IMG/VR virus record: IMGVR_UViG_3300044701_002789
Location: 62,001-126,000 of that record
Direction: 5' to 3' (one strand)
DNA: 64,000 bases
A program made the translations under genes and the position numbers. Below are positions 21,313 through 24,418 of the stretch, one piece after another. Position 1 is the first letter of the stretch. Each line of letters starts with the position of its first letter. The notes beneath the pieces were generated by a model. That model saw only the letters and a list, made by a program, of their open reading frames with translations, was not told the origin of the DNA and ran no database searches.

Positions 21313-21584
21313 TTGGTAATATTTTGATACTTTCCGAGAATGATTTCTTTAGGGTTAGTGACAGTAAAAAATTTATCAGAATGTACTAAGAAAGTATCTT
21401 GGGATGAATAGTCAGATAACCATGGAGAAAGAGTACTGTCCGAATTTATTATGAAGGGTTTTATTAGTTTCCAATCAGGATCTCCGAGAACAGCATCAAC
21501 TTCCTCAACTTCACTAATAATTGCGGTTCCATTATCAAATATAAGAATCTTAATTTTTTCCATTTTGCTCATCTCCAGATACAC
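21309..21584 (-). CDS. Hypothetical protein (true start probably 21563 or 21572)
   Basis: Resembles the neighbouring 21550 ORF (both start K.LI/AIL..G..IIS and end with W/P-containing motifs). Confidence 0.7.
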   Translation of the reverse strand: MYLEMSKMEKIKILIFDNGTAIISEVEEVDAVLGDPDWKLIKPFIINSDSTLSPWLSDYSSQDTFLVHSDKFFTVTNPKEIILGKYQNITK

Positions 21585-21861
21585 GGTTTTCGTAAAGTTC
21601 TTTTAATCTATCAACTGGTTCCACTATGGTAACAATCCACTCAGGATGTATTTCCACAGTTCTATCTTTAGATAGAATAGGCCAGTTATTCAAAGTTATG
21701 CTATGAGTAAAATCACCACCATTTAAAGCATAAGATCCTGCTAATTTGACCTCACAAGGATCCTCAAAAATATAATACATTAATGATTCTTGATAATATG
21801 CTTCTTTGATATTGGAGATTAAATTTTCCCCAGATTTTAGAATTGCAAGTTTTACAGTCAT
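21550..21861 (-). CDS. Hypothetical protein
   Basis: MTVKLAILKSGENLIS...; start reassigned downstream of the promoter at 21883-21911. Confidence 0.7.
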   Translation of the reverse strand: MTVKLAILKSGENLISNIKEAYYQESLMYYIFEDPCEVKLAGSYALNGGDFTHSITLNNWPILSKDRTVEIHPEWIVTIVEPVDRLKELYENRVSGDEQNGKN

Positions 21862-21882
21862 ATCAGTCGTACACCAATACAC

Positions 21883-21945
21883 ATTATACCACAAAAAAAT
21901 GGGGGAGTCAACCTGGATTTTGCCAGGAACTCCCCCATGCGGCGA
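21883..21945 (-). promoter_or_regulatory. hsp20 terminator overlapping a consensus sigma70 promoter
   Basis: GGGGGAGT/ACTCCCCC + T7; TTGACT (21906-21911)-17-TATAAT (21883-21888) with extended TG. Confidence 0.75.
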
Positions 21946-21965: not shown

Positions 21966-22400
21966 TTAAAAATAATCTTTTCTTTTATGATGCTCAGGAA
22001 CAATTTTTCTAATATTAATAATTAGAAGTCCATCTTCAAATGTTGCATCTTTTACTTCTGTATCATCTGCCATAGTCCATGACCTCTTAAAAGATCTCTG
22101 CGCTAATCCCTTATGGACATAATCGGTATCAGTTTCCTTATCTTCTTTTTGCCCCTCCACAAAAAGTTTCCCATCTTGGGTATACACATAAACTTCTTTT
22201 TTCTTAAATCCAGCAAGAGCAATTTCAAGTCTAGATTCTACATTACTAACTTGCACAAGATTATATGGAGGATAATTTGTTGTAGTTTCGTGTAACGTCA
22301 ATAAGCGATGAAAATATTCATCCATTCCAATACTGTATCTACCAATTCTATCCATTATTGCAGAAAGATCTGCTGTAGTATATCGGGAAAGATTATTCAT
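21966..22400 (-). CDS. hsp20: Small heat-shock protein Hsp20
   Basis: YPPYNL...LEIALAGF...KGLAQRSF...ATFEDGLL alpha-crystallin motifs. Confidence 0.93.
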   Translation of the reverse strand: MNNLSRYTTADLSAIMDRIGRYSIGMDEYFHRLLTLHETTTNYPPYNLVQVSNVESRLEIALAGFKKKEVYVYTQDGKLFVEGQKEDKETDTDYVHKGLAQRSFKRSWTMADDTEVKDATFEDGLLIINIRKIVPEHHKRKDYF

Positions 22401-22490
22401 AATAGTTCTCCTTTTTAAGCGAGTTTGTTTTTGACCCTTTCGGCGCCAATTAACAATGGGTAGATTTTAGTCTCACCCATCACTATTATA
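22401..22490 (-). promoter_or_regulatory. ROSE-like three-hairpin 5' UTR of hsp20
   Basis: TCGCT (UYGCU) pairs with the SD AAGGAG leaving a bulged G; two upstream hairpins; TATAAT at 22485-22490. Confidence 0.55.
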
Positions 22491-22504
22491 TATTAGATTT
22501 CAAT

Positions 22505-22528
22505 AAAAAGGGGAGTGTAGAACTCCCC
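22505..22528 (-). terminator. Intrinsic terminator after regA
   Basis: GGGGAGT/ACTCCCC followed by T5. Confidence 0.75.
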
Positions 22529-22533
22529 ACTTT

Positions 22534-22974
22534 TCATTCGGTTTCCTGAACCTTTACTTTTTTCCCGATATTATATTTTTGCTCAAGTTCCCACTCTCCT
22601 TTCTCCCGATAAGAAATTACCTTGATCTGGTTAAGTGGTGCAATGTCTAATATTTTATCAGTATCAACTACTGCGATTAGACCCCAATCGGAAAGCAAAC
22701 GTATAATTCTATTTCTTCGTTGAATATCGTTTACCGTAAGATTTGCGTGCTTACCATCAAGAGCAAAAAGTTCCTTAAAACTTACAATATAATATCTACC
22801 TTGCTTATGTAAAATGTGGCAAGATTGATACAGTTTCTTTTCTTTTCTTGATGCAACCCCAATCCTTGTCAAAGTCTCACGAACTTTCAAGAAATCATCA
22901 GGTTCATTAAGAATGACCTCCACCATCATGTTTGGAGACCAGTTTACTTGTGGTTCAATTGTTTGATTCGTCAT
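22534..22974 (-). CDS. regA: Translational repressor RegA
   Basis: DDFLKVRETLTRIG...LYQSCHILHKQGRYYIV.FKELF. Confidence 0.95.
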   Translation of the reverse strand: MTNQTIEPQVNWSPNMMVEVILNEPDDFLKVRETLTRIGVASRKEKKLYQSCHILHKQGRYYIVSFKELFALDGKHANLTVNDIQRRNRIIRLLSDWGLIAVVDTDKILDIAPLNQIKVISYREKGEWELEQKYNIGKKVKVQETE

Positions 22975-23357
22975 TTTGTTCCGCCTGTGTCAAGTCGTTT
23001 TTTTATAAAGTCAATCTGTTCTTTATTTAGAATTTTTAAAGCTTGTAATGCTTTTTCATTATTATAACCATAATATTTTTTTATGTATTCTAAATCCGTG
23101 ACCTTATCTTTTCGGATCCAAGGAGAAAATCTTTTCCTTTTCCTTAAAGTATTTAGATAAAACGCATATTGCATATCTTTATCTATATGACTATTCATGT
23201 TCATTTCATTAGCAAATAATATTGCATCAATATGACCAGATAGACATTTATTTATAATATAAGGTGGATAATCCTTGATGGAAGTTGGATCTTCGTTCAT
23301 CAAGTTCTTTTTAGTATTATTAATAGAATTCAACCAATCCTTTAATTCATGTGTCAT
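22971..23357 (-). CDS. gp62: Clamp loader small subunit gp62
   Basis: YPPYIINKCLS...ANEMN...KRKRFSPW...YYGYNNEKA. Confidence 0.9.
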   Translation of the reverse strand: MTHELKDWLNSINNTKKNLMNEDPTSIKDYPPYIINKCLSGHIDAILFANEMNMNSHIDKDMQYAFYLNTLRKRKRFSPWIRKDKVTDLEYIKKYYGYNNEKALQALKILNKEQIDFIKKRLDTGGTK

Positions 23358-24418
23358 CTAATAATCTCCAATTCACTGCCGGGTTCCCATATCTCTAAGG
23401 TAGTTCTCAATCTGTTTTCTTCAATTAGTTTTTCATACCTTTTAGATGATTTTTTCTTCCACCAAGTAATAACATCATTGACATCATGCTTAAACTCAGA
23501 AATATAATACCTTTTCTTTTCTGTTAATTTTTTAGCATTTTCAATTGCAGTATTGAATTGATTCAACTTGGTCTCATCCTTTAATGAATTTCGGATAATA
23601 GAAATCATCTTTTGCTGGATTTTCAATTTTTTGGAAGACTTGTCTGCAGGAACCAATCGTTCCCCATTATTTCTCTCATTGAACCACCAAAAGAAATCTC
23701 TAAATTCATCATCATGGAATAATGGAAGAAAATTACTTTCAGTGTCCCCAATATGTTTGAGATATGGTTTAAGACCATCATACATGGAAACGCCCTTAGT
23801 TGTTCCGTACAATGAAGTAGTCTCAAAATATTTTAAATCTGTACCATACTTTGTATCAAATTGATTTTTGAGTTCTTTAGAGCACGCTAAAAGCGCAAGA
23901 AGTTTACCCCCAAGATAATTATATCCAAATGGTTGAACAGGTACAATATTAAACGCCATCACGAATTCATTATTAATAGTTTCCAGAGGAAGAACTTTAT
24001 TAAAGTATTCGTTTCTTGGTTTTGAGTTAATAGTCGGAGACCCAAATCTAACTACCCCAAGAACCTTTTTAGTGTTAGTTTCTTCAACTATCCATTTATG
24101 GGTTCTACCTGGAATTGCTTCTTCTACGGCATTTGAAGCAGTTAAATTTAAAGTTTCCGAATACAACCACTGATTAAATTTAGATGTAGGTTTGGAACTT
24201 GTATCAACAACATGAATACAAATATCCATATCATTTGGATGCATTTGAAATGCATCAAACATTTCAGTTTCCGCACCAAACAAACATCCAGATCTAGAAG
24301 TTATTCTGTCTTTCTTCACAAAACGAAGATAATCATCAATACGATTAAATTGAGAATAGTAATTTATAAACTTATCTGCCGCATAAATGGCATCTTGTTC
24401 GGTTAAAATCAGTGTCAT
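23354..24418 (-). CDS. DUF4338-family (Druantia DruA-like / Mom-related) protein
   Basis: GYNYLGGKLLALL, ETTSLYG and YDGLKPY..IGDT motifs. Confidence 0.65.
   Translation of the reverse strand: MTLILTEQDAIYAADKFINYYSQFNRIDDYLRFVKKDRITSRSGCLFGAETEMFDAFQMHPNDMDICIHVVDTSSKPTSKFNQWLYSETLNLTASNAVEEAIPGRTHKWIVEETNTKKVLGVVRFGSPTINSKPRNEYFNKVLPLETINNEFVMAFNIVPVQPFGYNYLGGKLLALLACSKELKNQFDTKYGTDLKYFETTSLYGTTKGVSMYDGLKPYLKHIGDTESNFLPLFHDDEFRDFFWWFNERNNGERLVPADKSSKKLKIQQKMISIIRNSLKDETKLNQFNTAIENAKKLTEKKRYYISEFKHDVNDVITWWKKKSSKRYEKLIEENRLRTTLEIWEPGSELEIIR

What the first reader, a model, noticed from the sequence alone, without database searches (positions are those of the whole stretch)
22401..22490. ROSE-like RNA thermometer controlling phage hsp20
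Seen: an approximately 78-nt leader with three hairpins: ATGGGT/ACCCAT; TTGGC-G-CC-GAAA-GG-GTCAA; and CTC-G-CTT-AAA-AAG-GAG, which buries the SD 7 nt before the ATG. Established: ROSE elements precede small heat-shock genes, have 2-4 hairpins, and use U(U/C)GCU paired to the SD with a bulged G; all of these features are present here. Inference: the phage senses temperature or heat stress itself to time chaperone synthesis.
Basis: partly seen in the sequence, partly recalled or inferred. Interest (0 to 1): 0.62.

Follow-up and report, generated by a model that had tools for sequence, protein, structure and literature searches.

The report
ROSE-like leader of cyanophage hsp20
The small heat-shock gene of this T4-like cyanophage, and of every relative examined, is preceded by a conserved two-hairpin RNA leader whose ribosome-binding-site hairpin matches the proven ibpA/ibpB RNA thermometers of E. 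coli almost letter for letter, so it is very probably a translational sensor of temperature and perhaps of protein aggregation, a kind I did not find reported for phages.

Summary
Upstream of a 144-aa Hsp20 gene (21966-22400, -) lie a regA terminator, a TATAAT box and three hairpins. The last hairpin pairs CUCGCUU, with a bulged G, to the SD AAGGAG, 7 nt before the ATG.

I collected hsp20 leaders from 243 loci chosen by protein similarity only, plus seven divergent cyanophage isolates.
- Hairpin 1 is private to this phage.
- Hairpin 2 is conserved as a structure. All five lower-stem pairs show compensatory changes, the bulged G is invariant, and the loop is capped by GNRA or UUCG.
- The anti-SD arm is 99.5% conserved, as conserved as the SD itself, while the loop, linker and spacer vary. 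183 of 187 unique leaders carry the exact motif.

The element meets every sequence and structure feature that defines ROSE-like thermometers. It stays below the gathering score of all three Rfam ROSE models, but the validated E. coli ibpA element also fails the ROSE_3 model. A model built from the phage leaders picks out the ibpB and ibpA leaders as its two best hits in 8 kb of E. coli DNA.

The protein is IbpA-like and keeps R93 and Y34, the residues IbpA needs to repress its own mRNA.

Temperature response is predicted only. SD masking is not unusually strong for this genome. I found no prior report in Rfam or in the papers searched.

The parts
22510..22528 (-). Intrinsic terminator hairpin of regA (7-bp stem, 5 G-C pairs), followed by a T run at 22509-22505. 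It marks the upstream border of the hsp20 transcription unit.
   Evidence: (terminator scan). 142 of 187 related leaders have a run of five or more T upstream.
22485..22490 (-). -10-like promoter box TATAAT, within TATATAATA. Relatives have TATAATTA, NTAAATA or a perfect T4-late TATAAATA 4-8 nt before the conserved hairpin. The transcription start is inferred at about 22478.
   Evidence: All 187 unique leaders have such a box. The promoter class and the start site are inferred, not shown.
22456..22480 (-). Hairpin 1 (ATGGGT, 13-nt loop, ACCCAT). It is a lineage-specific insertion, not part of the conserved element, and is probably the 5'-terminal stem-loop in this phage.
   Evidence: fold; present only in the window and the identical loci L001 and L002; single copy in the genome.
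22431..22449 (-). Predicted to stay folded up to at least 45 C.
   Evidence: all 5 lower-stem pairs show compensatory changes; bulged G identical in 92 of 92 leaders; top pairs 96.5%; loop 57%, switching between GNRA and UUCG; pairing probability 0.94 at 25 C and 0.79 at 45 C.
22424..22430 (-). Single-stranded A/C-rich, G-free linker (AAACAAA here; 10-12 nt in relatives).
   Evidence: 70% column identity; the base composition is conserved rather than the sequence.
22408..22423 (-). It contains the ROSE core UCGCU paired to AGGA.
   Evidence: anti-SD arm 99.5% and SD arm 99.3% identical; loop 62%; -2.5 kcal/mol at 25 C, zero near 46 C; predicted melting midpoint about 36 C; same arms as E. coli ibpA and ibpB.
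22398..22407 (-). 7-nt spacer AACUAUU and the AUG start codon. The minimum-energy fold leaves both unpaired.
21966..22400 (-). hsp20, encoding a 144-aa class-A, IbpA-like small heat-shock protein. It keeps the equivalents of IbpA Y34, R93 and R97 (Y43, R102 and R106 here).
   Evidence: PF00011; best NCBIfam match is IbpA, 91.9 bits, below the 212-bit cut-off; alignment; 190 of 190 unique phage proteins keep these residues.
22534..22974 (-). regA (translational repressor), the upstream neighbour. It is context only: the leader goes with hsp20, not with regA.
   Evidence: PF01818, E 6e-44. Syn19, S-ShM2, S-RIM8 and S-P4 have the leader without an adjacent regA.

Best explanation
The hsp20 mRNA of this T4-like cyanomyovirus starts just downstream of a -10 or late-type promoter box. 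Its 5'UTR is a ROSE-like translational control element made of two conserved hairpins.

The first is a stable hairpin at or near the 5' end, with an invariant bulged G and a GNRA or UUCG cap. It probably helps the leader fold and protects the mRNA. This phage has an extra, private hairpin in front of it.

The second is a weak sensor hairpin. In it CUCGCUU pairs with the SD AAGGAG around a bulged G, while the AUG stays free. At low temperature the SD is sequestered. As temperature rises the sensor hairpin melts first, the 30S subunit gains access and Hsp20 synthesis increases. Its predicted stability is about 3 kcal/mol lower than that of the E. coli ibpA sensor, which would fit a lower working range suited to aquatic hosts.

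The element most likely came into phages together with a class-A (IbpA-type) small heat-shock gene.

Shown: the sequence, the structure, their conservation and covariation, and the identity of the core to validated thermometers.
Inferred: the transcription start, the melting behaviour, and the effect on translation.
For: 1. All three hairpins are in the sequence, and RNAfold gives them as the minimum-energy fold.
2. Leaders were sampled by Hsp20 protein similarity only. 183 of 187 unique leaders carry CUCGCU[U/G], a 2-4 nt loop, AAGGAG, then 4-8 nt and ATG. Nineteen different loops occur. Three of the four exceptions keep every pair: one U-A to C-G double change, one U-G wobble, and one UUGCU variant. 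The fourth loses only the terminal pair.
3. RNAalifold predicts the bulged SD helix on its own.
4. In the formal pair counts, 96.4% of cells pair, against at most 59% in slid registers and 0 of 500 shuffles. All 5 lower-stem pairs of hairpin A show compensatory changes.
5. The anti-SD arm is 99.5% identical across 92 leaders that are at most 90% alike. The loop (62%), linker (70%) and spacer (73%) drift.
6. The element persists down to about 40% Hsp20 identity in seven divergent cyanophage isolates, including phages where hsp20 is not next to regA. The variable position alternates UCGCU and UUGCU, exactly the degenerate position of the ROSE consensus.
7. The E. coli ibpA sensor is CUCGCUG-AUUU-CAGGAG with the same bulge, following a hairpin that also has a bulged G. 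The phage-derived model's two best hits in 8 kb of E. coli DNA are the ibpB and ibpA leaders.
8. The published definition of a ROSE-like element is fully matched (PMC11342760, PMC11182007). The two-hairpin Pseudomonas ibpA thermometers have the same layout and the same behaviour: hairpin I stays stable, hairpin II melts, and the AUG is free (PMC3669281).
9. Predicted melting: the sensor helix falls from 0.90 at 15 C to 0.33 at 45 C, while hairpin A stays at 0.79 or above. The SD opening energy is in the same range as for the validated ibpA element.
10. Cyanophage small heat-shock proteins group with bacterial class A proteins, not with host proteins (PMC3827213). The best NCBIfam match is IbpA.
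Against: 1. There is no experimental or expression evidence. No RNA sequencing run was listed for this locus, and the transcription start is inferred.
2. No Rfam ROSE model reaches its gathering score: ROSE_3 gives 13.4 bits against 43, and ROSE and ROSE_2 give no hit at E up to 10.
3. The sensor hairpin is weak (-2.5 kcal/mol at 25 C). The predicted SD opening energy is only the genome median, rank 58 of 116.
4. The predicted drop in opening energy between 25 and 45 C is only about 1 kcal/mol in the window. The model re-pairs GGAG with codons 4-6 at high temperature.
5. The SD helix has almost no covariation, because the SD is fixed. Its support is conservation, which a protein-binding site would also explain.
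6. In 76 of 178 leaders the energy model prefers a shifted register without the bulge.
7. It is not obvious why a lytic aquatic phage with a possibly late promoter would need to sense heat.
Confidence: 0.6

Rival explanations
1. The leader is mainly an operator for feedback by Hsp20 itself, as with E. coli IbpA. Free Hsp20 oligomers would bind the structured 5'UTR and block translation. When Hsp20 is drawn into aggregating proteins, for example during mass synthesis of virion proteins, repression would be lifted. On this reading the phage senses proteotoxic load, and temperature is secondary. This is compatible with the thermometer reading and may act together with it.
For: The phage Hsp20 is IbpA-like. 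It keeps the equivalents of IbpA Y34, R93 and R97 in 190 of 190 unique proteins, whereas the non-repressing paralog IbpB has F, Q and L at those positions. R93 and Y34 are essential for IbpA to bind its own 5'UTR, and R93 co-occurs with ROSE thermometers in alpha- and gamma-proteobacteria (PMC10474464). IbpA represses both the ibpA and ibpB leaders, and that repression depends on the stem-loops (bioRxiv 10.1101/2020.04.20.050740). Those are the two leaders that the phage model finds in E. coli. The invariant bulged G and GCC/GG top of hairpin A look like a recognition feature rather than a purely thermodynamic one.
Against: IbpA self-repression needs oligomers held by the C-terminal I-E-I motif. 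The window's protein ends in VPEHHKRKDYF and has no such motif. R93 may be kept for reasons of chaperone structure alone. No binding data exist for any phage Hsp20. Which part of the UTR IbpA recognises is not known.
Confidence: 0.28
2. The leader is a constitutive expression-setting element with no sensing role. The 5' hairpin would protect the mRNA against 5'-end-dependent decay. The weak SD hairpin would simply set a fixed, moderate translation rate.
For: Hairpin A sits at the inferred 5' end, and its caps switch between ultra-stable tetraloops, GNRA and UUCG. That points to stability rather than sequence recognition. The Pseudomonas study also proposes an mRNA-stabilising role for hairpin I (PMC3669281). 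Predicted SD masking is average for this genome.
Against: A fixed dampener would not need the exact ROSE core and bulged G to be kept at 99.5% identity across phages whose Hsp20 proteins have diverged to about 40% identity. Many other sequences could mask an SD equally well. The same core in ibpA and ibpB has been shown to respond to temperature.
Confidence: 0.1
3. The conserved ACUCGCUUAAA stretch is a DNA element, a Pho box bound by host PhoB, as annotated upstream of hsp20 in S-PM2d.
For: PMC10976474 lists ATTCAAACTCGCTTAAATA at -31 of S-PM2d hsp20 as a putative Pho box.
Against: In that same study hsp20 did not respond to phosphate depletion, and its upstream fragment is not among those reported as bound by PhoB. 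The motif lies downstream of the -10 box, inside the leader. The commonest variant, CTTTTAAA, matches only 4 of the 8 positions of the consensus PyTTAAPyPy(T/A) (from the loop census). The conservation pattern follows RNA pairing: wobble and compensatory changes in the arms, and a free loop.
Confidence: 0.02
4. The leader is an operator for the phage translational repressor RegA, whose gene lies immediately upstream.
For: regA lies directly upstream in this phage and in many relatives. From general knowledge, T4 RegA binds translation initiation regions.
Against: The leader is equally conserved in Syn19, S-ShM2, S-RIM8 and S-P4, where hsp20 is not next to regA. A weaker version also occurs in a Pseudomonas jumbo phage. 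The region between the SD and the AUG, where T4 RegA acts, is the variable part (73% identity, lengths of 4-8 nt).
Confidence: 0.03

Closest known systems
E. coli ibpA and ibpB ROSE-like RNA thermometers (Rfam ROSE_2, RF01832)
   Same: They sit in the 5'UTR of a class-A small heat-shock gene. The sensor hairpin is CUCGCUG-AUUU-CAGGAG in ibpA and CUCGCUU-CUUAG-AAGGAG in ibpB. Both have the same bulged G and the same UCGCU-to-AGGA pairing. A stable hairpin precedes each, with a bulged G in ibpA and a UUCG cap in ibpB. The AUG lies 7-9 nt after the SD. The protein keeps IbpA R93 and Y34.
   Different: The phage sensor is about 3 kcal/mol weaker and lacks the outer clamp pairs of ROSE_2. The linker is longer and A/C-rich. 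The conserved core has two hairpins instead of three or four. The promoter is a -10 or late-type phage box, not sigma-32. The ROSE_2 model does not detect the phage element. The setting is a virus of cyanobacteria.
Short two-hairpin ROSE-like ibpA thermometers of Pseudomonas (Rfam ROSE_3, RF02523; PMC3669281)
   Same: They have the same overall layout: a UTR of about 60 nt, a stable hairpin I that does not respond to temperature and may stabilise the 5' end, a short hairpin II holding the SD and U(U/C)GCU, and an unpaired AUG. ROSE_3 is the only ROSE model that gives any hit here.
   Different: The score is far below threshold (13.4 against 43 bits). Hairpin I of Pseudomonas is rich in G-C pairs; I did not compare it with the phage's conserved bulged-G-plus-tetraloop design. 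The phage hairpin II is predicted to be less stable than the E. coli ibpA sensor; it was not compared with Pseudomonas.
ROSE1 and other alpha-proteobacterial ROSE elements (RF00435)
   Same: They share the U(U/C)GCU anti-SD, the bulged G and the small heat-shock gene context, as defined in PMC11342760.
   Different: They have three or four hairpins and are more than 100 nt long. No hit from the model was seen.
Cyanobacterial hsp17 thermometer of Synechocystis (single hairpin; mentioned in PMC3669281)
   Same: It controls translation of a small heat-shock gene through the SD, in a cyanobacterial cell.
   Different: It is not ROSE-type: a single hairpin without the UCGCU and bulged-G core (this rests on my own knowledge). 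It belongs to the host-type small heat-shock lineage, from which the phage protein is distinct (PMC3827213).
Known phage RNA thermometers: lambda cIII, SPbeta blyA (fourU), and the sigma-70 gene of a gut Caudoviricetes phage (fourU) (PMC11182007)
   Same: They are temperature-responsive leaders encoded by phages.
   Different: None is ROSE-like, none controls a chaperone gene, and none belongs to a core gene of a whole virus family.

Membership tests
ROSE-like RNA thermometers (definition in PMC11342760, PMC11182007, PMC3669281) | Located in the 5'UTR of a small heat-shock gene (classically class A, IbpA-type) or another stress gene | tested here: met
   The Hsp20 ORF starts 7 nt after the SD. 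The best NCBIfam match is IbpA. That this stretch is a UTR is inferred from the terminator and the -10 box.
ROSE-like RNA thermometers (definition in PMC11342760, PMC11182007, PMC3669281) | Two to four hairpins | tested here: met
   There are three in the window. Two are conserved in all relatives.
ROSE-like RNA thermometers (definition in PMC11342760, PMC11182007, PMC3669281) | The 3'-proximal hairpin holds the SD, imperfectly paired to a conserved U(U/C)GCU | tested here: met
   UCGCU (22422-22418) pairs with AGGA. It is present in 183 of 187 unique leaders. UUGCU variants occur in L228, S-CRM01 and C48C1. PA5oct has UUGCG instead.
ROSE-like RNA thermometers (definition in PMC11342760, PMC11182007, PMC3669281) | A predicted bulged G in the anti-SD strand | tested here: met
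   G22420 is bulged in the minimum-energy fold and in the RNAalifold consensus. Caveat: in 76 of 178 leaders, where the SD is followed by C, the energy model prefers a shifted register in which this G pairs. This does not apply to the window.
ROSE-like RNA thermometers (definition in PMC11342760, PMC11182007, PMC3669281) | Heat melts the SD hairpin and raises translation; deleting the bulged G or strengthening the stem abolishes induction | not testable with these tools
   Predictions only. The sensor helix falls from 0.90 at 15 C to 0.33 at 45 C. Deleting the bulge is predicted to change the hairpin from -2.5 to -6.6 kcal/mol at 25 C.
Rfam families ROSE (RF00435), ROSE_2 (RF01832), ROSE_3 (RF02523) | Covariance-model score at or above the gathering threshold | tested here: not met
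   ROSE_3 gives 13.4 bits (gathering score 43, E 9.7). ROSE and ROSE_2 give no hit at E up to 10. The whole phage genome has no ROSE_3 hit at E <= 0.001. Control: validated E. coli ibpA scores 100.4 bits on ROSE_2 but only 20.8 on ROSE_3, so these models are specific to lineages.
IbpA-type self-repression module (PMC10474464; bioRxiv 10.1101/2020.04.20.050740) | The small heat-shock protein carries R93 and Y34 (IbpA numbering) | tested here: met
   Y43 and R102 of the window protein align to Y34 and R93. Both, and the equivalent of R97, are kept in 190 of 190 unique phage proteins. IbpB has F, Q and L at these positions.
IbpA-type self-repression module (PMC10474464; bioRxiv 10.1101/2020.04.20.050740) | C-terminal I-x-I oligomerisation motif required for repression | tested here: not met
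   The window's protein ends in VPEHHKRKDYF and has no I-E-I equivalent in the alignment.
IbpA-type self-repression module (PMC10474464; bioRxiv 10.1101/2020.04.20.050740) | The protein binds its own 5'UTR and represses translation | not testable with these tools
   This needs binding and translation assays.
Cyanobacterial Pho box (PMC10976474) | Direct repeats matching PyTTAAPyPy(T/A) in the promoter, PhoB binding, and a response to phosphate | tested here: not met
   The commonest leader variant matches 4 of 8 positions (loop census). The motif lies downstream of the -10 box. The paper itself reports that S-PM2d hsp20 did not respond to phosphate depletion, and it is not listed among the fragments bound by PhoB.

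The most novel reading that the evidence does not exclude
The leader is a dual sensor that cyanomyoviruses and some jumbo phages have carried along with an IbpA-type chaperone gene. Phage Hsp20 would bind its own ROSE-like 5'UTR through R102 (the equivalent of IbpA R93) and hairpin A with its bulged G. The virus would then measure the aggregation load of the infected cell, and temperature as well, and would adjust chaperone output during virion assembly. This would be the first RNA-based proteostasis feedback loop encoded by a virus, and it would sit in a core gene of the most abundant marine myoviruses.
Probability: 0.25. Interest if true: 0.78.

Novelty: new member of a known kind. Interest (0 to 1): 0.62.

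Why it matters
hsp20 is one of the 25 core genes shared by the 16 cyanomyovirus genomes compared in PMC3037559, yet neither its role nor its control is known.

A conserved ROSE-like leader would have four consequences.
1. It would take ROSE thermometers beyond the bacterial lineages in which they have been described, into viruses and into cyanobacterial cells.
2. By the count in PMC11182007 it would be only the fourth phage RNA thermometer, and the first that is ROSE-type or belongs to a family-wide core gene.
3. It would show a regulatory RNA travelling with its gene through lateral transfer and staying nearly unchanged while the protein diverged to about 40% identity.
4. It would offer a direct experimental route to when and why cyanophages make Hsp20, with relevance to infection outcomes in warming waters.

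The weak sensor hairpin also offers a natural low-temperature variant of the ROSE design.

Tried and rejected
- **Rfam scan of the region and ROSE_3 search of the whole phage genome.** No family reached its threshold. A weak PrrB/RsmZ hit on the regA end and terminator was judged to be chance.
- **SD masking as a discriminator.** The hsp20 SD opening energy is the genome median, so predicted masking strength cannot be used as evidence.
- **Motif rarity in one genome.** Two occurrences against 0.56 expected, which is weak on its own.
- **Host copies.** Scanning one genome per species with the phage Hsp20 alignment gave only four loci, all in unlikely MAGs and probably mis-binned phage DNA. I could not centre a genome search on cyanobacteria, because 'of' needs a handle and none was available. 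Host small heat-shock leaders were therefore not examined. The class-A origin rests on PMC3827213.
- **Pho-box reading.** Rejected (PMC10976474).
- **RegA-operator reading.** Rejected because the leader is conserved where regA is not adjacent.
- **Expression class of hsp20.** The Syn9 transcriptome paper (PMC5029184) is not held, and other searches gave nothing.
- **MAFFT alignment of the variable-length hairpin A stem.** It was misaligned. I replaced it with an alignment fitted to a covariance model. That alignment leans towards the modelled structure, and this was allowed for by the slid-register control.
- **Not used.** The large protein searches, structure prediction and complex prediction were not needed.
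Full report
**What is at the coordinates**

The feature lies on the minus strand. Reading 5' to 3', the order is as follows:
- the stop codon of regA (Pfam PF01818, E 6e-44);
- a terminator hairpin at 22528-22510 with a T run;
- a TATAAT box at 22490-22485;
- hairpin 1: ATGGGT, a 13-nt loop, ACCCAT (22480-22456);
- hairpin 2: UUGGC-G-CC, GAAA, GG-GUCAA (22449-22431, bulged G at 22444);
- an A/C-rich linker;
- hairpin 3: CUC-G-CUU, AAA, AAG-GAG (22423-22408, bulged G at 22420);
- a 7-nt spacer;
- the ATG at 22400 of a 144-aa Hsp20 (PF00011, E 4e-15).

RNAfold returns exactly these three hairpins as the minimum-energy fold: -19.9 kcal/mol, z = -2.46, with 4 of 200 shuffles folding as well.

The window is part of a complete 258,284-bp phage genome with terminal repeats. 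It is a T4-like cyanomyovirus whose nearest isolate is the freshwater Synechococcus phage S-SRM01.

**Is it more than chance?**

Within this one genome the case is weak.
- The strict motif occurs twice in 258 kb against 0.56 expected.
- The predicted energy needed to open the SD is 3.9 kcal/mol at 25 C. That is the median of 116 SD-bearing ORFs of the phage, rank 58.

Comparison with other phages decides the question. I fetched 243 loci from IMG/VR using three divergent Hsp20 proteins as queries, so the sampling did not depend on the RNA.
- Of 187 unique leaders, 183 have CUCGCU[U/G], a loop of 2-4 nt in 19 different sequences, AAGGAG, then 4-8 nt and ATG.
- Three of the four exceptions keep every pair: a U-A to C-G double change, a U-A to U-G change, and a C-G to U-G change that creates UUGCU. 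The fourth loses only the terminal pair.

I then analysed 92 leaders that are at most 90% alike.
- RNAalifold predicts the bulged SD helix without any prompting.
- On the alignment fitted to a covariance model, 96.4% of cells pair, against at most 59% in slid registers. No shuffle out of 500 reaches the observed values.
- Column conservation follows the structure. The anti-SD arm is 99.5% identical and the SD arm 99.3%. The sensor loop is 62%, the linker 70% and the spacer 73%.

**The three hairpins are not equivalent**

Hairpin 1 exists only in this phage and in two identical metagenome contigs. It is single-copy in the genome, so it is a private insertion.

Hairpin 2, which I call hairpin A, is conserved as a structure.
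- All five lower-stem pairs show compensatory changes. Examples are GGAU/GUCC, GUAC/GUAC, GUC/GAC, GAUC/GAUC, GAAC/GUUC and GUAACU/AGUUAC.
- The bulged G on the 5' strand is identical in 92 of 92 leaders.
- The CC/GG top is 96.5% conserved.
- The cap switches between GNRA and UUCG.

In relatives a -10-like or T4-late-like box (TATAATTA, NTAAATA, or a perfect TATAAATA) lies 4-8 nt upstream of hairpin A. Hairpin A is therefore probably the 5' end of the mRNA. This is an inference.

**How far the element reaches**

hsp20 homologues occur in 506 of 50,697 phage records, nearly all of them cyanophages. I examined seven divergent cyanophage isolates: Syn19, S-ShM2, S-RIM8, S-P4, S-N03 and S-CRM01 at about 40% Hsp20 identity, and C48C1 at about 29%. 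All have the same layout: box, bulged-G hairpin, linker, CU(C/U)GCUU loop and AGGAG.

This holds also where hsp20 is not next to regA. The Pseudomonas jumbo phage PA5oct has a weaker version.

The variable position alternates UCGCU and UUGCU, which is exactly the degenerate position of the ROSE consensus. S-PM2 has the motif too. There it was annotated as a putative Pho box, but in that study hsp20 did not respond to phosphate, and its fragment is not among those bound by PhoB (PMC10976474).

**Comparison with known thermometers**

The literature defines a ROSE-like element by four features: two to four hairpins, the SD in the last one, imperfect pairing of the SD to U(U/C)GCU, and a predicted bulged G (PMC11342760, PMC11182007). 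All four are met here.

The Rfam models are not met. ROSE_3 gives 13.4 bits against a gathering score of 43, and ROSE and ROSE_2 give no hit.

As a control I scanned the validated E. coli ibpA leader. It scores 100.4 bits on ROSE_2 but only 20.8 on ROSE_3. The ROSE models are therefore specific to lineages and do not detect each other's members.

That alignment also shows the E. coli sensor as CUCGCUG-AUUU-CAGGAG with the same bulged G. It follows a hairpin that itself has a bulged G on the 5' strand.

In the reverse direction, I ran the phage-derived model without filters over 8 kb of E. coli DNA on both strands. Its two best hits are the leaders immediately upstream of ibpB (ACUCGCUU-CUUAG-AAGGAGA, after a UUCG-capped hairpin) and of ibpA. 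Both carry experimentally established thermometers (bioRxiv 10.1101/2020.04.20.050740). The E-values are weak, 0.6 and 2.3.

The closest overall architecture is the short two-hairpin ibpA thermometer of Pseudomonas. There hairpin I is stable, insensitive to temperature and possibly an mRNA stabiliser, hairpin II melts, and the AUG is free (PMC3669281).

**Predicted physics**

- In isolation the phage sensor hairpin is worth -3.7 kcal/mol at 15 C, -2.5 at 25 C and -1.1 at 37 C. It reaches zero near 46 C.
- The E. coli ibpA sensor is about 3 kcal/mol more stable.
- Deleting the bulged G is predicted to add about 4 kcal/mol of stability.
- In the context of the window's leader the sensor helix probability falls from 0.90 at 15 C to 0.79 at 25 C, 0.53 at 35 C and 0.33 at 45 C. 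Hairpin A stays at 0.79 or above.
- SD opening energies for the phage leaders have medians of 5.4 kcal/mol at 15 C, 4.4 at 25 C, 3.4 at 35 C and 2.4 at 45 C. The same calculation gives 3.1-4.1 kcal/mol at 25 C for E. coli ibpA, so the ranges agree.

There are two caveats.
1. In the 76 of 178 leaders where the SD is followed by C, the energy model prefers a shifted register, GCUUU/GGAGC. That register also buries GGAG but pairs the 'bulged' G. Measured independently of register, GGAG pairs with the anti-SD segment with median probability 0.92 at 15 C, 0.88 at 25 C and 0.73 at 45 C. The invariant CUC, which is unpaired in the shifted register, argues for the canonical register.
2. In the window, the model re-pairs GGAG with codons 4-6 at high temperature.

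**The protein**

The best NCBIfam match of the phage Hsp20 is IbpA: 91.9 bits, well above any other small heat-shock family but below the equivalog cut-off of 212. The phage proteins are 26-36% identical to E. coli IbpA.

Published phylogeny places cyanophage small heat-shock proteins with bacterial class A, not with host cyanobacterial proteins, and proposes lateral transfer (PMC3827213). In line with this, a scan of one genome per prokaryote species found no cellular homologue apart from four probably mis-binned contigs.

IbpA represses its own mRNA and the ibpB mRNA by binding their thermometer-containing 5'UTRs. Repression is relieved when IbpA is drawn into aggregates. It needs R93 and Y34, which IbpB lacks (PMC10474464; bioRxiv 10.1101/2020.04.20.050740).

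All 190 unique phage Hsp20 proteins keep the equivalents of Y34, R93 and R97. E. coli IbpB has F, Q and L at these positions. This makes an IbpA-like feedback loop a serious complement or rival to pure thermosensing.

Against it, the C-terminal I-E-I oligomerisation motif required in E. coli is absent from the window's protein.

**Verdict**

There is a real, strongly selected, structured 5'UTR element. It satisfies the defining sequence and structure features of ROSE-like thermometers, and it is most simply explained as having travelled into phages with a class-A small heat-shock gene.

My confidence by level:
- about 0.95 that it is a functional cis-regulatory RNA;
- about 0.6 that it regulates translation by sequestering the SD in a temperature-dependent way;
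- about 0.25-0.3 that Hsp20 feedback is the main or an additional input.

Rfam 15 has no family for this element. Searches of the open literature found no report of a ROSE-like element in a phage or upstream of cyanophage hsp20. A 2024 paper counts only three phage RNA thermometers, none of them ROSE-type (PMC11182007).

I therefore classify it as a new member of a known kind in an unexpected host range, with function still to be shown. 

Noticed in passing
window 23354-24418 (-): A 354-aa ORF sits between the clamp-loader genes gp62 and gp44. It has a Pfam DruA (Druantia defence protein) domain hit, E 6e-10, covering profile positions 78-177 of 297. This is an unusual passenger for a replication module.
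   Followed up: no
L257:100-211 (Pseudomonas phage PA5oct, NC_071039.1): PA5oct-like Pseudomonas jumbo phages carry a weaker version of the same two-hairpin hsp20 leader: GAGU-G-CC...GG-GCUC, then CUUGCG-UAA-AGGAG. Their Hsp20 is closest to the cyanophage proteins in the phage collection, at about 35% identity. Hsp20 homologues in Pelagibacter, Methylophilales, Vibrio, Campylobacter and Agrobacterium phages were listed but not examined.
   Followed up: partly
L007:1445-1503 and 75 other leaders where the SD is followed by C: The energy model prefers an alternative register, GCUUU/GGAGC, which also buries the SD but pairs the 'bulged' G. Whether the two registers coexist or exchange is unknown. 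It could matter for how the sensor is tuned.
   Followed up: partly
L245-L248 (genome contigs): Cyanophage-type hsp20 contigs (67-83% identical protein) sit in MAGs labelled Acidibacter, Psychromonas, Thermoplasmata and Actinomycetota. This is most likely phage DNA binned into the wrong genomes.
   Followed up: no
window 22502-22635 (-): A weak Rfam PrrB/RsmZ hit (23.3 bits against a gathering score of 44, E 0.0046) spans the 3' end of regA and its terminator. It is probably chance, arising from GGA motifs plus a terminator.
   Followed up: no
window 21883-21911 (-): A near-consensus sigma-70 promoter (TTGACT, 17 nt, TATAAT; 11 of 12 positions, with TG) lies just downstream of hsp20. It stands in front of, or overlaps, the start of a DUF6561 ORF at 21550-21894.
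   Followed up: no
L244:4890-4958 (-) (E. coli K-12 ibpA-ibpB spacer): The E. coli ibpB leader has the same sensor arms as the phage (CUCGCUU and AAGGAG), after a UUCG-capped hairpin. It is closer to the phage element than the ibpA leader is.
   Followed up: partly
window 22383-22388 (-), codons 4-6 of hsp20: CUUUCC in the coding region is predicted to capture GGAG once the sensor hairpin has melted. It is specific to the window and not conserved in relatives.
   Followed up: no
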